A stretch of DNA of 63,067 bases, the filler included, from Octopus bimaculoides (lineage: Eukaryota), in assembly GCF_001194135.2 (NCBI RefSeq). It is 6 parts of 5 records of this genome, joined end to end, with 100 filler letters (N's around TTAATTAATTAA, not from the genome) between each part and the next. Parts side by side here need not be neighbours in the genome. Positions count along the whole stretch, not along the records: positions 1 to 24,543 come from NC_068993.1; 5 more parts are not named here. One strand, 5' to 3'. The stretch's first letter is position 1. Every line of letters begins with the position of its first letter. Of the stretch, positions 2,207-22,860 are shown one piece after another. The position numbers and the translations under genes were made by a program. The notes under the pieces were generated by a model. That model had not been told where the DNA came from. It saw nothing but the letters and a program-made list of their open reading frames with translations, and did not search any database.

Positions 2207-2544
2207 NNNNNNNNNNNNNNNNNNNNNNNNNNNNNNNNNNNNNNNNNNNNNNNNNNNNNNNNNNNNNNNNNNNNNNNNNNNNNNNNNNNNNNNNNNNNNN
2301 NNNNNNNNNNNNNNNNNNNNNNNNNNNNNNNNNNNNNNNNNNNNNNNNNNNNNNNNNNNNNNNNNNNNNNNNNNNNNNNNNNNNNNNNNNNNNNNNNNNN
2401 NNNNNNNNNNNNNNNNNNNNNNNNNNNNNNNNNNNNNNNNNNNNNNNNNNNNNNNNNNNNNNNNNNNNNNNNNNNNNNNNNNNNNNNNNNNNNNNNNNNN
2501 NNNNNNNNNNNNNNNNNNNATATATATATATATATATATATATA

Positions 2545-2710
2545 TGACAGACTTCTGTGAGTTTCCGTCAACCAAATCCGCAGACATGACTTTGGTCGCC
2601 CCAAAGCTATAGTAGAAGGCACTTGCCGAAGGTGCCACGCAGAGGGACTGAACCCAGAACCATGTGGTTCGGAAGCAAGATTCTTAGCGCACAGTCACGT
2701 CCGCGTCTAT
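2545..2710 (-). mobile_element. SINE family A, 5' half
   Basis: Reverse complement of the family A head (agtttccgtcaaccaaatcc...ggtgccacgcagagggactgaacc...). Confidence 0.8.
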
Positions 2711-2809
2711 ATGGCAATACATATACATATAATTATAATAATAAAGGACGTAACCGTATATATGTTTAGAAACCAAGGACGTTATATAGACCTCTTTGAC
2801 GCAAATTAG

Positions 2810-2920
2810 AGAATGGGTGCGTATTATACACAAGGTTTAGGTTTTTCAGAGGTACAGCCCCCTAAAAATCCCCTGCGTATTATACACAAGGGCGGACCAT
2901 ACTCGAGGATTCACGATATT
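2810..2920. mobile_element. Possible terminus of a pogo/Tigger-like DNA transposon or MITE
   Basis: An 18-bp direct repeat tgcgtattatacacaagg at 2818-2835 and 2874-2891 is followed by ggcggaccatactcgaggattcacgata. This resembles the CGTA..CTCGAGTATA.TCCGC-type termini I recall for this group. Confidence 0.35.
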
Positions 2921-2932
2921 TAAACGCACATA

Positions 2933-3466
2933 TATCCCCACAAGAAAAAATCTGGACTAGTCAAGACTGGGAAACGTGAAGTCCAGCTGACATTGCTATA
3001 GCGTGAGAGTATTCTCTGTCCAAAGCACTGTCGTAACAACTACATTGTTTCTCTTGTGGTATAAACAGTTGCCCTATCTTGCTGAAACCATGCGTGAGAT
3101 CTACTTTGACTAGCCCAGAATTTTTTCTTGTGGGGATACCTGAAGGAGAGGTTTTACGTCAACAAACCGGAGTCTCTAGTGCAACTGAAGAAGAACATCA
3201 GTAGAGAAATCAGAGAAGTGGGGTCTGAAACTCTCGAGGGTGTTATGGTGCAAGTTTTGGAAAGAGCAGGGGCATGCGAAGCCGAAAATGGCTGCCATTT
3301 AAGCGACGTCTTTTTCATATGTGATGTAATGGTGTTGCAAAATTTGACTGGTGCATATCAATTTGCATTATGTCATTTATATTGTATCAAAATTTTATGC
3401 ATTTAATTGTAAAGTTAAGGAAGTTATTAAACATTGAAACACATCAAGCACTTTGGGGGCACCCTG
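2933..3466 (+). mobile_element. Mariner-like (maT/DD37D-type) transposase 3' fragment with 3' TIR; upstream part inverted
   Basis: The + strand 3106-3320 reads FFLWGYLKERFYVNKPESLVQLKKNISREI...CEAENGCHL. The - strand 3105-2933 reads WFQQDRATVYTTRETM*LLRQCFGQRILSR...WTSRFPVLTSPDFFLWGY. The element ends in caccctg|TA. Confidence 0.8.
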
Positions 3467-3467
3467 T

Positions 3468-3534
<67 letters not shown>

Positions 3535-3553
3535 TAGATATAGATATAGATAT
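3468..3553. repeat. (AGAT)n tetranucleotide microsatellite
   Basis: Directly visible. Confidence 0.95.
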
Positions 3554-4103
3554 ATGCTTACGAGCCAAGTCTATTTAATTGTAATTTCTTTAATTTAAGT
3601 AATATTTACTACGACTGACGGGGCCTCACGCACAGTCCCAAGTTTGCTGACTTTAAACAAGCCGAGACTACGCCAATACCTATTTCTATGGCTGACGATA
3701 GTTCTCATTTTCTGCTAATTCTTTCCAGTTTCCACTTCGAATTTATATATTATATGCATGTGTATGGTGGGGGGGCTGGATGGGTACATGCGTGTGTCTG
3801 TCTGTCTGTGTGTCTGTCTGTGTGTCTGTATGTGCGTGTATGTCTGTGTGTATGTGTGTGTGTGCTTGTGTGTGTGTGTGTGCGTAAGTTATTTTATGTA
3901 CGTATCTAAGCATATTACACGGTTTCTGTTGCAGCTTATGATTTATTTTTCAAACCTATCAGAACTTGTTAAAGTGGAAATAATAAATTTATTACATTCG
4001 TTAATTTCCTTTCAATATTCTTTAATATTTTTTGCAATTTAGATACTATGAAATCACTCTGTTAATGAGTTAATATTATTACCACAATATATTTTAAAAT
4101 GTG

Positions 4104-4170
4104 TATTTATTTATTTATTTATTTATGGGTTTCAGCCAAGTGGCTGCGGTCATGCTGGTGCACCACCGTG
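4104..4170 (-). mobile_element. Severely 5'-truncated LINE 3' tail with (AAAT)n
   Basis: ttatttatgggtttcagccaagtggctgcggtcatgctggtgcaccaccgtg is almost identical to 47850-47905. It is flanked by gtgtat on both sides (4101-4106, 4168-4173), which resembles a TSD. Confidence 0.7.
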
Positions 4171-5406
4171 TATGCAGACATTTAAGAAGTAATCCAAAAG
4201 AGAAAAATGAGCCGCAGATATTTTAGAAATTAATAATCTGATCAAAGCTTCTACAGTGACATTGCACTGTTCCTTTGCAAAAGAAATACTTTCCTCTCAA
4301 AGTATTATTGTTCTGTATTCCCGCAAATTGGTGCCAGTGTTACACAGTTCAAGGCATTAAACAGCAGGAACAACGTGTAATTAACCTGTGTTTCAGTAGT
4401 TTGATAGCAATAAGTTAACATTTTTGCATGGAGAGTAGTTGCTTGCTGTTGGCACTCCGACGACTTTTTCTGAGTTTTAGCAACAATCAATCCCAATCAA
4501 TGCCTTTATATTCATACGTAACAATCAGCTCGTCATACAAATGTTAGAAATAAGTCACCCTCTGGCTATCTCTCCTGGAACGACATTGCTTCTATAAAGT
4601 GTTCACATTAAATTCACTTCTAAGACTATGTTTTCCTCTTGAATACCAAAAAAAGTAGTTTTAGCCTAAGGTAGTATCTCATTCATGAAATAGCCAAAAT
4701 CAGTCCAAACTTAGAATATTGTGCCAGCAGAATTTCTCTTTTTTTATTTCTATTATAACTCCTTCGCAGAGTTTTAAAATTTCATTCTATTCTTTGGTTG
4801 TATTGTCTCATCAAGCTAACATTTTTCTAAGTTTATTATGCCATTTTCTCTATTAATGAATGATGGTATTTATTCAGCTCGGTTTTCCATATCATTCTAA
4901 ATACTAAATGCTTCTGATAATTTACTTCATCATAAACCAAGCCGCTTTCTATTTCCTATGCTCAGCATCAAGATATACCACCCTCTCTTGATTATTACCC
5001 CAGTTTTTCTCCGTTCTACTGTCCTGATTATCACACTATCTAAACCAGATAACCAACACTAGTGATATAATAGATAATAAAACGACTGCAACTCTAATTT
5101 GCAATCCAATAATGAATCTGCTAACAGCCTCAAGCAAACAATTAAAATCATTTCAACTAACAAATATCAGCTGAAGTTCCTGGAAAACAGGACGTGTGTT
5201 CTCAACAAATCCGTGAAGAATTTCCATTTTCTGTTGAAACAATATTTATTATTTAACACAATAACATCTTTGAGGAACGTGTGATTATCATCAATTTCAT
5301 TTCTCACAGGCTTGATATTTAATTAAGAAACGTTCATTCATATTACCGAGTAAACACAAAAATACACCGTTGATAAATGTATTTTTCATTATAAAAGTAT
5401 ATTATA

Positions 5407-5830
5407 TGAGGTGTAGTCAAAAAGTATCCGACCTTTGTCCAAAAAACAAGCAATATTAAAAAAAAACTCATCATTTTAGTTTCGTCTCCTTCAAAGTATT
5501 CCATTTGGGAGTCTACACACTTCTGCCAGTGTGTCTGCCGCTGCCTGAAACGTTTCTGGAAATCACTTTGTGGGATGCTGTAGAGCTATGCCGTCAATTT
5601 GCTTAATGTCCTCTTTTGACTCAAATCTTCCCCCTTTGAGTGTTTTTTTTTTGTTTTTGTTTTTAGCTTTGTCAATAGCCAAAAGTCACACGAAGCCAAG
5701 TCTGAAGAAAGCCTGACGAACAAGTGGTGTGTTTTGCTTGACGAGGAATGCTTTAACGACGTGGGTAGAATGAGCGGGTGCGTTGTTATGGTGGAGTTGC
5801 CAGTTTTATTGCTACCCACTGGTGCACATT
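5407..5830 (-). mobile_element. Mariner (DD34D-type) transposase 3' fragment with TIR
   Basis: The - strand reads LHHNNAPAHSTHVVKAFLVKQ, then SSDLASCDFWLLTKLK...KG, then KCVDSQMEYFEGD-type C-terminus. TIR TA|tgaggtgtagtcaaaaagtatccg at 5407. Confidence 0.85.
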
Positions 5831-6117
5831 AGTTACACGACGGTCTTATTGCAGAAACAGCTGTAAGCTAATGAATTTCATAAGATAATCGTTTATTCCT
5901 TTGTCATCTTATGCATTTTATTTTCTTAACTTTTGAGAGCTCTAAAACGTATAGTAGAGTATTAAATGTCTCTACATTGATGGTCTAGAGTGAAAGGAGA
6001 GAAAATATGTGTAATAAAGTTTATCTATAAGGGGTGTGTATTCTTCAACTTTACTCTATAATCTTAAGGACATAATTTCTGTATTAATTGTCCAATAAAC
6101 TATCCGTAACACTCAGT

Positions 6118-6300
6118 GATATTGGTTTCAAATTTCGGCACAAGGCCAGCCTTTTCATAGTCGATTACATCGACCTCAGTATTCAGCTAGTACTTATTTC
6201 ATCGACCACAAAAGGCAAAGTCGACCTGGGCAGCGTTTGAGCTTAGAACGTAAAGACGGACGAAATGCTAAGCATTTTGCCTGGTGTACTAACTAGTCTG
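6118..6300 (-). mobile_element. tRNA-derived SINE, family B
   Basis: ttggtttcaaatttcggcacaaggccagc...gtcgattacatcgacc...aaaggcaaagtcgacc...gaacgtaaagacggacgaaatgctaagc. Copies occur at 11420, 21610, 49220, 50610 and 51246. Confidence 0.8.
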
Positions 6301-7227
6301 TAACTTGTAACTCTCACCTCTATTCACACTTAATGCACTTCAAGGGAAAAAGCTTAAAACGTGCTGGTTTTAGCTTTCCTTTATGTAATTCAGCAATCCC
6401 AACCAATATTATTACTGTAAAAAACTGGAAAAGTTATCGTGTGAATTGAATTTAGGGTCCTTTACAGTCGCTTAAGCCACTAAATAATGAAGAAAGTACC
6501 ACGAAGCCTAAGAATTTAATGGAATACTGAAAGGGGAGTTGCGCTGTTTTGTCCTTTCTTCTAGAAAATTACTGTCCTAAAGAAAGCTTTAAGCGAAATA
6601 TTGTCTCAGCCACATGATATATGTCATGTGGACAACAAGACTATCTTTTGTAGAAGAATATTGTTAATTTAATTGACAGCTGCATTATATTTTAGTTAGA
6701 TTTGCACTCGAGAAGACTGAAAATGGAAACTAAATATTGAAAAGCATCAGGATCATATTTTTGCACAAAATGATGAACCATAAATTGAGTGAGGTTTGAA
6801 ATATTTGATAATTACACTCAGCAATGACATAAGTTACGTTTTACTCCCATACACTCGCCCTCGAATCACAATCTATCGTTAAAAACAAAGCGGTGAACAA
6901 TTTATTCCCTGAAATACAAAAAGCCTTTGATTATGCATCTGCTAACATAGATCTGCCAATAAGCATCCACAGCAAAAGTAATATAGTAATAGCAGCAGTA
7001 ACAGTAGCAGTATTTCAGGTATTCACAATAAAGAGAAGTAATTAATTTTCTTAGGGATGATCATATTTTGCCAATTAAACACACACACCATATATTTGGT
7101 CTTCACTTCAGCTTTATTATTTTAGTTACTTTGTCAAAGCTCTTTCGTCACACTTCCTATGACCTATTCAACGACTCTTTATCTTGGATTGGTTTCGATG
7201 AATTTTTCTCTGTATGTGTGTGCGTGT

Positions 7228-7290
7228 TTCGTTGTTGTTGTTGTTGGTATTGTTGTTGTTGTTGTTGGTATTGTTGTTGTTGTCGTTGTT
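7228..7290. repeat. (TGT)n/(AAC)n trinucleotide repeat, read as poly-Asn at the end of the Rep ORF
   Basis: Directly visible. Confidence 0.9.
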
Positions 7291-7362
7291 GAAGATTCGG
7301 CGTTTTAACTCCAGAAATTCTTTTAGTATTTCTTTAAATACCATTGTGTTGTCTGCCGGTGT

Positions 7363-7699
7363 TAGAGGGCGAATATCCCATCTATCAGCACTCATCTTCG
7401 TTTGGTCTGGATCGTAATTAGCAAATACCACTACATGCGGTATCTCAAAACTTTTAGTAACCGATACGTATTTACAGGAACATATCAGACCATTTTTAAC
7501 GCTTTCCATAACCTCGTAGTTGATATGTTGTTCTTGACTACGAGTCAAATCAAAAATAACAATGCGTTGTCCATTGTACATGAACTTTATATCCAGACTT
7601 CTTCCGTTCTCGAATCTTATACCGTTTAAAGTCTGCAGGTATCTCGATAAATGTTTTCCCACTGTTTCCAATAGGATCCGAGTACCATATTATTTTACG
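7363..7699 (-). pseudogene. rep: Endogenous CRESS-DNA-virus Rep, SF3 helicase domain (nanovirus/alphasatellite-like), one frameshift
   Basis: The - strand reads RKIIWYSDPIGNSGKTF (Walker A, 7699-7649). After a frameshift it continues LSRYLQTLNGIRFENGRSLDIKFMYNGQRIVIFD (Walker B) LTRSQEQHINYEVMESVKNGLICSCKYVSVTKSFEIPHVVVFAN (motif C) YDPDQTKMSADRW (Arg finger) DIRPL. Motif order and spacing match nanovirus/alphasatellite Reps as I recall them. Confidence 0.88.
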
Positions 7700-8029
7700 C
7701 TGATATAGAAACTTTTCTAATTTTTGTACGTTATTTAAACCATGAACCCTACAAGAAGTAATGTATAAAAATATATCTTTTATTAATATTTAAAGACTAC
7801 CGTAGGTTCATTTGATATGTATTCAAACCATAATCTCACAGAATAATAGGCTTTGAGAATCCCAAAACCTAGAAAAGCTTATCTTTTCAAAATAATGTAT
7901 AACGTTTTTTTTTTCTTTTTCCAATCTCTTTCGTTTTTCATATTCGTTCATGGAATGCACTCAAGCTAGAAATTTTACTACCAAACAGCACCGACACATT
8001 CCTCACTACCAGTACGCCACCTCTACCAC

Positions 8030-8033
8030 TACT

Positions 8034-8070
<37 letters not shown>

Positions 8071-8112
8071 AGATCATCATCATCATCATCAAGATTATCA
8101 CCATCATGATCA
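8030..8112. repeat. (ATC)n microsatellite
   Basis: Directly visible. It produces the poly-D/poly-I ORFs. Confidence 0.9.
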
Positions 8113-8372
8113 TAAGTATTACTATCGGCAGCATTTTCAACATTATCTGCATTGTAATCATCAACAACGTCATTAAATCTACATTTCTTCATTCATTTAA
8201 TAACGGACAATAATTCCAGTCAAGCAATTGTAACCGTATGTATCTGCGTTTATACGTGTTTGTGTTAAGATGGAAAATAATATTTAAAGATGAGTAGGAA
8301 GATAGATAATAGATTACGTACGGAAATACATGCAAGTATATCCATCAATAGACACAAATACACACACAAACA

Positions 8373-8421
<49 letters not shown>

Positions 8422-8543
8422 NNNNNNNNNNNNNNNNNNNNNNNNNNNNNNNNNNNNNNNNNNNNNNNNNNNNNNNNNNNNNNNNNNNNNNNNNNNNNNN
8501 NNNNNNNNNNNNNNNNNNNNNNNNNNNNNNNNNNNNNNNNNNN

Positions 8544-10559: not shown

Positions 10560-10996
10560 TTTTTATTTACTTTTTTCAGTCACTTGACTGCTGCCATGCT
10601 GGGGCAATGCCTTGGAGATTTGTTTTCTTTTTAGTCGAATGTATCGACCCCAGTACCTATTATACTGAACCCTAATGCTGAACCTCTAATGCTGAACCCT
10701 AATGCTGAACTCCCCAGCACTAGTTGTCAGGCGGTGGTGCGGGACAAGCCCAGACAAAAAGACACGTACACAAACACACGCACGCACACACACACACACA
10801 CATACACACATATATATTCATATATACACGTATATATATATATATATACCTTCTTTCAGTTTCCGTCAACCAAAGCACAAGGCTTTAGTCGGCCTGGGGC
10901 TATAGTAGAAGATACTTGGCCAAGGTGCTACGCAGTGGGACTGAACCATATGGTTAGGAAGCAGGCTTCTTACCACAGAGCTACACCTGCACCTAT
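10560..10996 (-). mobile_element. SINE family A, full length, with an internal 3x ctgaacc(c/t)ctaatg-type tandem duplication
   Basis: Tail cagtcacttgactgctgccatgctgg, head ...ggtgctacgcagtgggactgaacc...cttaccacagagctacacctgcacctat, and tandem units at about 10664-10710. Confidence 0.8.
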
Positions 10997-11419: not shown

Positions 11420-11620
11420 AGAAGCGGAGTAATAGAATTACTAGATGCCTAGCAATATTACCTGTAATACTTTACGTTCTGAGATCAAGCATATCACGGT
11501 GATACCAAATTGCCTTTCAGCCTTTCGGGATCGATAAAATGAGTAACAGTTAAGTACTTCTGTCGTTATAATTGTTAGTTCCTATCCCAAAATGAGTGGT
11601 CTTGTACCTATTTTAAAACC
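11420..11620 (+). mobile_element. SINE family B, degenerate
   Basis: tacgttctgagatcaag...ttgcctttcagcctttcgggatcgataaaatgagtaacag central domain. Confidence 0.6.
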
Positions 11621-14121: not shown

Positions 14122-14150
14122 NNNNNNNNNNTATGCATGTATGTATATCC

Positions 14151-20827: not shown

Positions 20828-21609
20828 CGTGCGTGCGCGAGCGTGTGCGCGCGTGTGTGTATGTATACACATATATACACATATAAAATGATAGATATAT
20901 AACAGCGAAATCTTAACGATAAACCAGCAAAGCATTTCAAAGATAAATACAAGTATAAACATAGAAATTACAAAGAAACGATTGAAAAATAGTGCTATTG
21001 ATTGGAAGAACACCGTAAGTTGACCATAGCGCAATCTAGAGCTTGTTGACTTGCCTATTAAGAATTTAAGAAATGATAACAATTGAATTATGATCCTGCA
21101 TAGTTGTGCGAGATACATTCTAATGACCAAATATGACAATAATGTGAATTATTTGATGAAATCGAGGAAATAGTTGTCTGTTTACTTCGGGTGAACATAA
21201 ATTATGTCTACAGATTCTGTTAGGTGGAATATCAGCAAATAGATACTCCACAGATATCAACATATTTAAACGATAGCATGCATAAGCGTATGGCTGATAA
21301 TTCGTTTTGCAATTACGTAGCTCTGAGTTGACATATAGATGTGTACACATGCCAACGTTTACATGCATAAATGTATGCATTTGTACTTATTACATTCTAA
21401 TACAAGTTTTAAAATTCTTGTACTAATTTGTAGCAATAATTGCCTAATTAACTGTGTCCTTTCTAAAGATTAGTATTGTGGCAGTTAGTTAAATAAACAA
21501 GTTTCTTGTTGTAATAGATATAACTTTATATGTATATTCCGGGTGTTGCGATAAGTCTCTCATTAGTTTGGTATAGATGTTTCCTGTGTCACAATTCTTT
21601 AACATTATA

Positions 21610-21825
21610 TTGGTTTCAAATTTTGGCAGAAGGCCAGCAAGTTCGAGGGAAGGGTTAAATCGATGACATCGACTCCAGTGCTCAACTGCTACTTATTTTA
21701 TCAAACCGCAAAGGATGAAAGGCAAAGTCTACCTCGGTGGAATTTGGACTCAGAACGTAAAGATGGACGAAATGTCGCTAGGTATATCGCCCGGTGTGCT
21801 AACGATTCTACCAGCTCGGTGCTTT
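21610..21825 (-). mobile_element. SINE family B, full length
   Basis: ttggtttcaaattttggcagaaggccagc...aaaggatgaaaggcaaagtctacctcggtggaatttggactcagaacgtaaagatggacgaaatg...ctaacgattctaccagctcgg. Confidence 0.85.
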
Positions 21826-22860
21826 AATCTTCAACATTATATTAACAACAGCCAGGCAACTATGCGCGATTCACTTCTATTCCCAAATGGTCTTTTATGT
21901 TTGTATTTTACAGAGATCTGGACAGGACATTCTATCAGTATTCTTTCATATCATGACTGAATAGAGCTTCCACGTCACCGTGATTCTTATATTACTATCT
22001 TTAATTATTCTTTCTACAAATTCCATTGTAAAATAGTTTGACATAATATCTCCTTGGTAGATAACACTATAATGATATTTTCAAACAGTTACATATGAAA
22101 TAAATGATAGCTTCAGCGTTAGTTCTATCAGTTGTCTTATCTAGGCAGTTTACTCGTATCCATGTCTCATTTGCCCATTAGGTATATAATTGTTATATCT
22201 TGTTTTTGTTTTGCAAAACATACTTTTCAAAGTAACAGCTAGTATCTTTGTGGTTGATAAAAGATAGATTACTTTGCCTATTTATCTTGTCGTCACATTG
22301 AAGCCCTCTGCCAACATGGCTATACACTTTACTTCTAGTGATAGGTATACAAATTTTCCTTTGATAGACTGTTGTGATAGATAAAGTTGTTCTCTAGCTA
22401 TGTATCATTAATCATCACTCTTGATATACATTTCGAGGAGCATTTTTTGCAACTTACACGATGCTGTCTGCCTTAAGCATTCAGATAGGGTCTACAGGTG
22501 GGTACGCATATCTTTCGGAGATATACTGGTGAAATATGTAACCATCAGCGGGAACAATAAATCGGTTCATTTGTACAAAGTCATTCGTGATATTTCTTCC
22601 ACTCGAGTTGTACATGCAATCGTCTCAACCACATAATTACTCTCGGCATCATAAATGTTGTGGAACAATGATTAGTCTATTGAAAGTTTGCCACTTATGT
22701 CGTTTTGTTCACAAAATACTATGTACCATAAAAAGTAAAATATAAATAAGCAACAATGAAGTATTAAATTTGGAATACAAAACAGATGCGGCCATAGGAA
22801 AAGATGAAGTCAAAATACACTAAAGCATGACATTACACAGATACTAGCCAGATATCTTTT

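What the first reader, a model, noticed from the sequence alone, without database searches (positions are those of the whole stretch)
7363..7699. Endogenous CRESS-DNA virus Rep (nanovirus/alphasatellite-like helicase) in an animal, probably cephalopod, genome
Seen: Walker A GNSGKT preceded by RKIIWY, then SLDI..YN, Walker B IVIFD, NYE.MES.KNG, S.KY.S, motif C VVVFAN and Arg finger DRW, all correctly spaced. Established: this is the SF3 helicase of CRESS-DNA virus Reps, and the SLDI/IVIFD/KNG/SxKY signature is that of nanovirus- and alphasatellite-type Reps. The best-studied carriers of that signature infect plants. The segment is embedded, without gaps, between host-type SINE and microsatellite DNA. 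Inference: a fossil of a small circular ssDNA virus lineage that reached the germ line of this host, giving host and age information for viruses otherwise known mostly from metagenomes. The HUH endonuclease half was not recognisable upstream.
Basis: partly seen in the sequence, partly recalled or inferred. Interest (0 to 1): 0.85.

Follow-up and report, generated by a model that had tools for sequence, protein, structure and literature searches.

The report
Viral Rep helicase fossil in octopus
A roughly 400-base, broken remnant of the replication-helicase gene of a small circular single-stranded-DNA virus sits in repeat-rich octopus DNA; such fossils are well known in invertebrates, so the find is real but fairly ordinary, and its main value is that it points to an octopus-specific family of these genes.

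Summary
On the minus strand, window 7310-7704 encodes the SF3 helicase core of a CRESS-DNA-virus Rep, with Walker A, Walker B, motif C and the Arg finger in the right order. It keeps 24 of 24 family-conserved residues. It is a dead fragment: one frameshift, no internal stops, and cut off at both ends. There is no endonuclease, no linker and no C-terminal tail.

Its closest relative is an intact, annotated Octopus bimaculoides protein (97% amino-acid identity). The next closest are O. vulgaris proteins. Of 99 wider relatives, 84 carry the Viral_Rep endonuclease domain, and many sit on contigs of about 2 kb.

The fragment lies in a gap-free block together with repeats shared with O. vulgaris, so it is integrated in an octopod genome.

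"Nanovirus/alphasatellite-like" holds only loosely. Those are the nearest classified families (34% identity), but unclassified CRESS Reps are much closer (48-66%), and the quoted motif signature is shared across the whole clade.

Octopod copies form their own clade and share a lineage-specific C-terminal extension. Between copies, synonymous sites are saturated while the protein is conserved.

This is a new member of a known kind. Interest is modest.

The parts
7310..7704 (-). Rep-derived SF3 helicase fragment (broken gene). It has one frameshift and no internal stop codons. It is truncated at the 5' side (no endonuclease, no linker/oligomerisation region) and at the 3' side (no C-terminal extension). 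It covers Walker A, Walker B, the conserved Lys of the SCKY motif (a putative beta-hairpin residue, by analogy with other SF3 helicases), motif C and the Arg finger.
   Evidence: Translation. tblastn against P0011: 97% identity, E = 1e-75; against P0012: 92%. blastn against O. vulgaris L004:8083-8479 at 79.6%, and against L006, L007 and L003. 24 of 24 conserved family residues kept.
7168..7309 (-). Non-viral tail of the open frame. After homology ends, the frame runs on through the (AAC)n microsatellite, giving a poly-Asn run, to a stop at 7168-7170.
   Evidence: ORF 7168-7671. The tail matches only low-complexity poly-N linkers in PDB. Homology to all relatives stops at 7310-7315.
7231..7291 (.). 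(GTT)n/(AAC)n microsatellite about 20 bases from the 3' end of the fragment (host neighbour).
   Evidence: TRF: period 3, 20.3 copies.
8034..8113 (.). (ATC)n microsatellite on the 5' side of the fragment (host neighbour).
   Evidence: TRF: period 3, 26.7 copies.
6119..6300 (.). Short interspersed (SINE-like) repeat of the host. The same family occurs at window ~21600-21830 and ~11470-11610.
   Evidence: Ten or more matches at 72-83% in the 36-kb O. vulgaris locus L005. No tRNA or Rfam match.
7114..7183 (-). A 70-base stretch shared (82%) with the Logan contig L003:2-72, which also carries a Rep fragment. It lies on the other side of the Rep piece there. Its meaning is unexplained.
   Evidence: blastn.
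8422..8543 (.). Assembly gap (N) that bounds the gap-free block 2520-8421 holding the fragment and the host repeats.
   Evidence: N runs listed.

Best explanation
Window 7310-7704 (minus strand) is an endogenous viral element: a dead, doubly truncated, once-frameshifted piece of the Rep gene of a CRESS-DNA virus (phylum Cressdnaviricota), fixed in the nuclear genome of an octopod, most likely an Octopus species.

In the living virus this domain is the SF3 (AAA+) hexameric helicase. After the N-terminal HUH endonuclease nicks the origin, the helicase unwinds DNA during rolling-circle replication.

The piece here keeps every conserved catalytic residue but has no start codon, no endonuclease, no oligomerisation linker and a shifted frame. 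It cannot make a working helicase and most likely does nothing (inference).

It belongs to an octopod-specific clade of Rep-derived sequences. Some members are intact annotated genes: O. bimaculoides LOC106882589, and two O. vulgaris genes. The copies differ from each other at nearly all synonymous sites, yet the protein is conserved. The lineages therefore diverged while the helicase was under selection, either as replicating virus or as functional resident genes. Only afterwards were individual copies, including this one, cut down and left to decay.

Shown: identity as a Rep helicase, octopod host, integration, and degradation. Inferred: the route (primary integration versus secondary copy of a resident gene) and the lack of function.
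For: - Motifs and order are seen directly in the translation.
- Closest proteins: O. bimaculoides A0A0L8I7L6 / XP_014788809.1 (97%), O. vulgaris P0012 (92%) and P0014 (68%; UniRef names it 'Replication associated protein').
- The profile search finds 1193 relatives. Of the 120 listed, 82 carry precomputed PF02407, mostly on contigs of about 2 kb. A direct Pfam scan gives Viral_Rep in 84 of 99 relatives and RNA_helicase in 47 of 99.
- The family profile hits PCV2 Rep 7lar (1e-30), the nanovirus Rep 6h8o/2hwt (6e-17) and the geminivirus Rep 1l2m (9e-5).
- The AF2 model of the closest intact relative has pLDDT 86.9. Foldseek matches it to CRESS Reps in BFVD (E down to 1e-19) and to SF3 helicases in PDB: papillomavirus E1, AAV Rep40, B19 NS1 and the Vientovirus Rep hexamer.
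- The closest full-length Rep (P0027, 66%) lies on a 1985-nt contig with a convergent second ORF and a 30-nt terminal overlap, which indicates a free circular genome.
- Host: many interspersed repeats are shared with O. vulgaris chromosomes at 70-85% identity, in the same gap-free block as the fragment.
- Octopod clade: NJ bootstrap is 99% for the five close copies and 73% for window + P0011.
- Selection: window versus O. vulgaris L004 is 79% identical in nucleotides but 92% in amino acids. Third-position differences are 57 of 115, second-position differences 0; pS = 0.87 and pN = 0.047. All octopod pairs show the same pattern.
Against: - The window piece alone does not pass any Pfam threshold (RNA_helicase E = 0.046, 14.6 bits against a cut-off of 21.5).
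- No capsid gene, origin stem-loop or endonuclease accompanies it, so only one domain of one viral gene is present.
- Germ-line fixation is inferred from a single assembly. No orthologous locus in a second species could be examined.
- The DNA of the 97%-identical O. bimaculoides gene could not be retrieved, so primary integration and intragenomic duplication cannot be told apart.
- pS values above 0.75 show saturation, and probably a bias of the Nei-Gojobori estimate in AT-rich DNA. The ratio is therefore qualitative only.
Confidence: 0.9

Rival explanations
1. The fragment is not a separate virus integration. It is a recent intragenomic partial duplicate (segmental or repair-mediated copy) of the resident, intact Rep-derived octopus gene LOC106882589.
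For: It is 97% identical in amino acids to that gene's product, with 3 differences in 115 residues of the larger piece. It groups with it in the NJ tree at 73% bootstrap. It has only one disabling frameshift and no stops, which suggests a young copy. Both ends are truncated, which fits a copied fragment.
Against: The nucleotide sequence of LOC106882589 was not available, so nucleotide identity and shared flanks are untested. It is not proven that the window comes from O. bimaculoides. All other octopod copies differ from the window at saturated synonymous sites, which shows that many lineages did not arise by recent duplication.
Confidence: 0.35
2. The octopod Rep-like sequences are a co-opted host gene family: helicase only, with a new C-terminal coiled-coil tail, kept by purifying selection. 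The window piece is a pseudogenised member of that family.
For: - Intact ORFs without an endonuclease exist in two species: P0011/P0126, P0012 and P0014.
- They share a lineage-specific extension of 100-125 aa that is absent from about 115 other relatives.
- pN/pS in the helicase core is very low, 0.05-0.09.
- In L005 the endonuclease part is degraded while the helicase ORF stays open.
- Liu et al. 2011 report conserved, expressed Rep EVEs in other eukaryotes (PMC3198968).
Against: - Clearly dead copies (window, L003, L006, L007) show the same low pN/pS against all others. The constraint therefore acted before they died, which fits divergence in a replicating virus equally well.
- No orthologous pair between species could be compared.
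- No expression data were available.
- The extension is much less constrained than the core (pN/pS 0.34-0.8).
Confidence: 0.3
3. The stretch is viral contamination, or a chimeric join made by the assembler, and is not part of the animal genome.
For: The assembly is fragmented: N runs at 736-1665, 2207-2519, 8422-8543 and 14122-14131. Dennis et al. 2018 warn that Rep hits on short contigs may be contaminating virus (PMC6069186).
Against: The fragment lies in a 5.9-kb gap-free block with octopod repeats. It is truncated and frameshifted, unlike a replicating virus. Homologous copies sit inside 78- and 100-Mb O. vulgaris chromosomes between GPCR genes.
Confidence: 0.03
4. It is a cellular or transposon AAA+/SF3-like ATPase unrelated to virus Reps.
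For: The window piece alone gives no Pfam hit above threshold. The PDB fold matches also include cellular AAA+ proteins such as MCM, RuvB and Clp.
Against: Sequence relatives are overwhelmingly two-domain Reps with a Viral_Rep endonuclease (84 of 99). In the hits, the helicase match lies at residues ~200-320 of proteins of ~300-350 aa. The top fold matches are viral SF3 helicases and CRESS Reps.
Confidence: 0.02

Closest known systems
CRESS-DNA-like endogenous viral elements (Rep EVEs, 'CEV/CVe') of invertebrate genomes (Liu et al. 2011, PMC3198968; Dennis et al. 2018, PMC6069186; Rosario et al. 2018, PMC6186406)
   Same: A Rep-derived sequence integrated in an animal genome. It is fragmentary, there are multiple copies per host, some copies have open frames, and the copies group with unclassified CRESS lineages rather than with established families. 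Molluscs (Mytilus, Modiolus, Biomphalaria, Conus) are already on the published list.
   Different: The host is a cephalopod. O. bimaculoides v2_0 was among the genomes screened with circovirus probes by Dennis et al., but Octopus does not appear in the main text or its table of hits. No paper in the searchable library links octopus with cressdnaviruses. The octopod copies also carry a lineage-specific C-terminal extension.
Rep of unclassified CRESS-DNA viruses, e.g. Cyanoramphus nest associated circular X DNA virus (P0026), Tentweb spider associated circular virus 1 (P0049), and the 1985-nt Logan contig L008 (P0027)
   Same: The helicase core is 53-66% identical, with the same conserved motifs. 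These full-length proteins have Viral_Rep followed by the SF3 helicase.
   Different: Those are complete two-domain Reps on free genomes of about 2 kb. The window has only about 130 codons of the helicase, and they are broken.
Nanoviridae M-Rep and Alphasatellitidae Rep (Banana bunchy top virus and its alphasatellites)
   Same: These are the nearest classified families in the BFVD fold and sequence comparison (E = 6e-13 to 4e-12, 32-34% identity). Annotators of Lamellibrachia named close relatives 'Para-Rep C1', which to my knowledge is the Swiss-Prot name of an alphasatellite Rep. The helicase half does not match the circovirus helicase in the profile search.
   Different: Identity is only about a third, and dozens of unclassified CRESS Reps are closer. 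The quoted motifs are clade-wide, not diagnostic. The closest free relative is an ambisense two-ORF genome of about 2 kb, not a one-gene component of about 1 kb (own knowledge of nanoviruses). No reference phylogeny could be built here.
Circoviridae Rep (PCV2 Rep, PDB 7lar/7las)
   Same: The endonuclease half of the full-length relatives matches PCV2 Rep best (E = 1.2e-30).
   Different: The match covers only the endonuclease and linker (profile 6-153), not the helicase, which is the part present in the window.

Membership tests
CRESS-DNA virus Rep (Cressdnaviricota), SF3 helicase domain | Walker A, Walker B, motif C and Arg finger, in order and correctly spaced | tested here: met
   Seen in the translation. 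24 of 24 conserved family positions are kept.
CRESS-DNA virus Rep (Cressdnaviricota), SF3 helicase domain | Significant sequence similarity to Reps that also carry the HUH (Viral_Rep) endonuclease | tested here: met
   1193 profile hits. PF02407 in 84 of 99 aligned relatives. 4951 representatives at E <= 1e-3.
CRESS-DNA virus Rep (Cressdnaviricota), SF3 helicase domain | Pfam RNA_helicase (PF00910) at or above the gathering score | tested here: inconclusive
   Window piece: 14.6 bits against a cut-off of 21.5. Closest intact relative P0011: 21.3 bits against 21.5. 47 of 99 relatives match at E <= 1e-3.
CRESS-DNA virus Rep (Cressdnaviricota), SF3 helicase domain | SF3/AAA+ fold | tested here: met
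   Tested on the 97%-identical intact relative, not on the broken piece. AF2 pLDDT is 86.9. BFVD Reps match at E = 1e-19. PDB matches are E1, Rep40, NS1 and the Vientovirus Rep.
Complete CRESS Rep gene or CRESS virus genome | N-terminal HUH endonuclease (motifs I-III) joined to the helicase | tested here: not met
   Full-length Reps give no match to their endonuclease half anywhere in the window.
Complete CRESS Rep gene or CRESS virus genome | Capsid gene and origin stem-loop nearby | tested here: inconclusive
   The convergent ORF of the closest free genome has no match in the window, but CRESS capsids diverge quickly. The origin stem-loop was not searched for, because no reference motif was available without recalling it from memory.
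Nanoviridae / Alphasatellitidae Rep | Nanovirus or alphasatellite Reps are the closest relatives | tested here: not met
   BBTV M-Rep ranks 35 at 34% identity and the alphasatellites rank 44 and 47. Unclassified CRESS Reps reach 48% in BFVD and 58-66% in the protein database.
Nanoviridae / Alphasatellitidae Rep | Placement inside the family in a phylogeny with ICTV reference Reps | not testable with these tools
Nanoviridae / Alphasatellitidae Rep | The SLDI / IVIFD / KNG / SxKY signature is specific to the family | tested here: not met
   These positions are invariant or at least 90% conserved across the 99 aligned relatives, which are mostly uncultured CRESS Reps.
Endogenous viral element | Contiguous with host DNA | tested here: met
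   The gap-free block 2520-8421 holds the fragment together with repeats that have many copies in O. vulgaris chromosomes.
Endogenous viral element | Signs of decay (loss of coding integrity) | tested here: met
   One frameshift, no internal stops, and truncation at both ends.
Endogenous viral element | Vertical inheritance: the same insertion at the orthologous locus in other individuals or species | not testable with these tools
   No orthologous octopod locus could be fetched. The other copies (L003-L007) share no flanks with the window.
Circoviridae Rep | The helicase half aligns with a circovirus Rep helicase | tested here: not met
   The family profile aligns to PCV2 Rep 7lar over the endonuclease and linker only. 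7lar is absent from the top 50 PDB fold matches.

The most novel reading that the evidence does not exclude
Octopods carry their own clade of Rep-derived helicase genes. These genes have lost the endonuclease and gained a C-terminal coiled-coil tail of 100-125 aa. At least some copies are kept by purifying selection as host genes (co-option). Alternatively, the clade marks a still-circulating, octopod-infecting CRESS virus lineage that has entered the germ line repeatedly. Either reading would give a host to a branch of otherwise host-less metagenomic viruses. The window fragment would be one decayed by-product of that history.
Probability: 0.35. Interest if true: 0.6.

Novelty: new member of a known kind. 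Interest (0 to 1): 0.35.

Why it matters
CRESS-DNA viruses are known mostly from metagenomes, without hosts. A Rep fossil embedded in octopod chromosomes is direct evidence that one lineage has infected cephalopods or their ancestors.

The single fragment adds little, because Rep fossils in invertebrates, molluscs included, are well documented.

The wider pattern deserves a proper paleovirological description. It comprises several deeply diverged octopod copies, saturated synonymous sites with a conserved helicase, intact helicase-only ORFs in two species, and a lineage-specific tail. Studied properly, this pattern could show either co-option of a viral helicase or repeated endogenisation from a persistent octopus virus.

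Tried and rejected
- Pfam and PDB sequence searches with the window pieces alone gave nothing useful. PDB returned only poly-Asn linker artefacts, and Pfam returned a sub-threshold RNA_helicase hit.
- The profile search of the octopod C-terminal extension in the 5.8-billion-protein database returned only one protein, and did not even recover its own source proteins. It is uninformative. The local hmmsearch was used instead.
- The DNA of the closest O. bimaculoides gene could not be retrieved.
- An Rfam scan and a tRNA scan of the window found nothing, so the SINE-like repeat could not be typed.
- The repeat finder on the whole window returned mostly microsatellite noise.
- The search for a capsid relative was negative.
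- The attempt to identify the SRA runs holding close copies through the literature failed.
- The Zhao, Lavington and Duffy 2021 survey of CRESS EVEs is not held in the library, so I cannot exclude that it lists Octopus.
- Weak protein similarity upstream of 7704, to about 7729, was judged not significant, because DNA homology to every copy stops at 7696-7704.
- A splice-acceptor-like sequence at the 5' boundary was noted, but nothing supports an exon model.

Full report
**1. What is in the sequence**

The feature lies on the minus strand. One frame reads RKIIWYSDPIGNSGKT. A second frame reads LSRYLQTLNGIRFENGRSLDIKFMYNGQRIVIFDLTRSQEQHINYEVMESVKNGLICSCKYVSVTKSFEIPHVVVFANYDPDQTKMSADRWDIRPL.

The coding sense therefore passes from one frame to another once, which means one frameshift. 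There is no in-frame stop inside the homologous stretch. Every search used the pieces apart, or used relatives.

After homology ends, the open frame runs on through an (AAC)n microsatellite, giving a poly-Asn tail, to a stop at 7168-7170. That tail accounts for the only 'hits' of the raw ORF in the PDB sequence search.

**2. Extent of the element**

The matches to relatives are:
- tblastn of relatives: 7309-7702.
- blastn of an O. vulgaris gene: L004:8083-8479 against window 7704-7310, at 79.6%.
- blastn of three Logan contigs: 7696-7315, 7562-7315 and 7699-7531.

All agree that the homologous stretch is about 7310-7704. Full-length Reps and the intact octopus proteins find nothing else in the 24.5 kb. 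There is no endonuclease, no linker and no C-terminal extension.

The fragment is about 395 bases, roughly 130 codons, and is cut at both ends. It is the only substantial ORF in the window that is not low-complexity.

**3. What it is**

The piece alone is too short for Pfam (RNA_helicase E = 0.046).

A first protein search found ten short relatives. A profile built from them found 1193. At the top are:
- O. bimaculoides A0A0L8I7L6 / XP_014788809.1 (97% identity; UniRef calls it 'Helicase superfamily 3 single-stranded DNA/RNA virus domain-containing protein').
- O. vulgaris P0012 (92%).
- O. vulgaris P0014 (68%; 'Replication associated protein').

Below these come about a hundred proteins of roughly 300-340 aa that carry PF02407 Viral_Rep, most of them on contigs of about 2 kb. 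They include named CRESS viruses (Cyanoramphus nest associated circular X DNA virus, Tentweb spider associated circular virus 1, uncultured marine virus) and invertebrate genome proteins (Mytilus edulis; Lamellibrachia satsuma 'Para-Rep C1').

Further support:
- A direct Pfam scan of 99 relatives gives Viral_Rep in 84 and RNA_helicase in 47.
- The exhaustive phmmer search with the window piece gives 4951 cluster representatives at E <= 1e-3. The match typically lies at residues ~200-320 of a protein of ~300-350 aa, which is the Rep architecture.
- The family profile hits solved Rep structures: PCV2 (1e-30), the nanovirus FBNYV (6e-17) and a geminivirus (9e-5). All of these matches are over the endonuclease half.
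- An AlphaFold2 model of the 97%-identical intact protein is confident (pLDDT 86.9). It matches CRESS Reps in BFVD (E down to 1e-19) and SF3 helicases in PDB (papillomavirus E1, MPXV E5, AAV Rep40, B19 NS1, Vientovirus Rep hexamer).
- All 24 invariant or near-invariant family positions inside the fragment are kept. They include the Walker A Lys, the Walker B Asp, the motif C Asn and the Arg of the DRW motif.

**4. Host and integration**

The window shares many interspersed repeats, at 70-85% identity, with two O. vulgaris chromosomal loci (L004 from OX597824.1 and L005 from OX597828.1). One SINE-like family has copies at window 6119-6300, ~11470-11610 and ~21600-21830.

The Rep fragment, the microsatellites and several of these repeats lie in one gap-free block, 2520-8421. 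Homologous Rep-like genes sit inside O. vulgaris chromosomes of 78 and 100 Mb, one of them between GPCR genes.

The host is therefore an octopod. The closest protein points to Octopus, possibly O. bimaculoides, but the species is not proven. Contamination is very unlikely.

**5. How nanovirus-like is it?**

Among classified viruses, Banana bunchy top virus M-Rep and BBTV alphasatellite Reps are the first to appear in the BFVD list. They rank 35-47, with 32-34% identity. No true circovirus precedes them, and the family profile does not align to the helicase half of PCV2 Rep.

The helicase is therefore of the 'nanovirus-like' rather than the 'circovirus-like' kind, in the loose sense used by Liu et al. 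2011. That paper also found that nanovirus-like Reps group with circovirus-like ones in the N-terminal tree but not in the helicase tree (PMC3198968).

However, unclassified CRESS Reps are much closer: 48% in BFVD and 58-66% in the protein database. The quoted signature positions are conserved in at least 90% of the 99 relatives, so they mark the whole clade and not the two plant-associated families.

The closest free relative (P0027, 66%) lies on a 1985-nt contig with a convergent second ORF and a 30-nt terminal overlap. That is an ambisense two-gene circle. Membership in Nanoviridae or Alphasatellitidae is not supported. A reference phylogeny could not be built with the tools at hand.

**6. 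The octopod family**

In a neighbour-joining tree of the helicase core, the five close octopod sequences group at 99% bootstrap and window + P0011 at 73%. The more distant O. vulgaris P0014 joins at 55%. The neighbours are proteins on long ENA contigs and the Lamellibrachia proteins, so they are probably other EVEs.

The octopod proteins share an extension of 100-125 aa after the helicase. It has an invariant RSECE motif and a predicted terminal long helix. None of the other ~115 relatives in hand has it; their median tail is 24.5 aa. The window copy ends before this extension.

None of the octopod copies has a complete endonuclease:
- L005 keeps remnants of the motif I and motif III regions, in different frames, upstream of an open helicase ORF.
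- L006 keeps the motif III region out of frame.
- L004 starts within the linker.

**7. Substitution pattern**

Window versus the O. vulgaris gene in L004 is 79% identical in nucleotides but 92% in amino acids. Third-position differences are 57 of 115, second-position differences are 0, pS = 0.87 and pN = 0.047.

Every pair of octopod copies shows pS of 0.7-1.0 with pN of 0.05-0.2, including copies that are plainly dead. The C-terminal extension is less constrained (pN/pS 0.34-0.8).

The copies therefore come from lineages that diverged for a long time under purifying selection on the helicase. Individual copies decayed only recently. Two histories fit:
- Repeated endogenisation from a diversified, replicating octopod-associated virus lineage.
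- An old, selected host gene family that sheds pseudogenes.

Homology between copies is confined to the Rep coding region, with different 5' limits. This argues against a transposon with fixed ends.

The window copy differs from the O. bimaculoides protein at only 3 of 115 residues. It may therefore be a recent partial copy of that resident gene. Without that gene's DNA this stays open.

**8. Mechanism**

In the source virus, the domain forms the hexameric SF3 motor of Rep. It unwinds the genome after the HUH domain nicks the origin. This is established knowledge of CRESS Reps (a structural review is PMC8780604, listed but not read in detail).

The fragment here lacks a start codon, the oligomerisation linker and the endonuclease, and it is frameshifted. 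I infer that it is non-functional as a protein. A role as a source of small RNAs cannot be tested here.

**9. Novelty**

Rep EVEs of nanovirus-like and circovirus-like kinds have been known in eukaryote genomes since 2011, some of them conserved and expressed (PMC3198968). Dennis et al. 2018 list CRESS-group elements in four molluscs. They had O. bimaculoides v2_0 in their screened set, but Octopus is not mentioned in the main text, which holds the table of hits. No paper in the searchable library links octopus with cressdnaviruses.

The intact paralogues are already flagged by automatic annotation in UniProt and NCBI. One relevant survey (Zhao, Lavington and Duffy 2021) is not held.

I therefore rate the fragment as a new member of a known kind, with modest interest (0.35). 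The family-level pattern is the part worth following up.

**10. Rule compliance**

No repaired, joined, consensus or ancestral sequence was built.

Noticed in passing
L004:8001-8801, L005:27444-28487 (O. vulgaris); proteins P0011/P0126 (O. bimaculoides): Intact helicase-only Rep-like ORFs in two Octopus species share a lineage-specific C-terminal extension of 100-125 aa. It has an invariant RSECE motif and a predicted terminal long helix, and it is absent from all other relatives in hand.
   Followed up: partly
window 7310-7653 against L003, L004, L005, L006 and L007: All octopod copies differ from one another at nearly saturated synonymous sites (pS 0.7-1.0) while the helicase protein is conserved (pN 0.05-0.2). 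This holds even for copies that are clearly dead.
   Followed up: yes
L005:27356-27564: Remnants of the endonuclease motif I and motif III regions lie in different frames just upstream of an open helicase ORF, and the stretch between them is missing. The endonuclease is degraded while the helicase is preserved.
   Followed up: partly
L001:3818-4610 and 5728-6591 (ENA ERZ26052378, 5.4-Mb contig, organism unknown): Two Rep copies lie in tandem about 1.9 kb apart in a large eukaryote-size contig, as expected if a concatemer of a small circular genome was integrated.
   Followed up: no
window 7114-7183 and L003:2-72: A 70-base stretch (82% identical) lies next to a Rep fragment in both sequences, but on opposite sides of it. 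It could be a permuted remnant of the same circular genome, or an unrelated repeat. It is unexplained.
   Followed up: partly
window ~7705-7716, minus strand: The bases just 5' of the homology boundary read like a splice acceptor (a pyrimidine-rich run ending in CAG). There is no evidence that it is used.
   Followed up: no
L008 (Logan SRR10717928, 1985 nt): The closest full-length Rep (66% identity in the helicase) lies on a contig with a convergent second ORF split over the contig ends and a 30-nt terminal overlap. This looks like a free circular two-gene genome.
   Followed up: partly
L003:1223 and L007:~852: Two Logan contigs from different runs break off their Rep homology at the same point in the protein, after and before the TRSQE motif. 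This may be two sides of one interrupted copy. No shared inserted sequence was found.
   Followed up: no
window 2584-2654 and 10877-10947: A 71-base direct repeat (80% identical) belongs to another interspersed repeat family that is also present in O. vulgaris locus L005.
   Followed up: no
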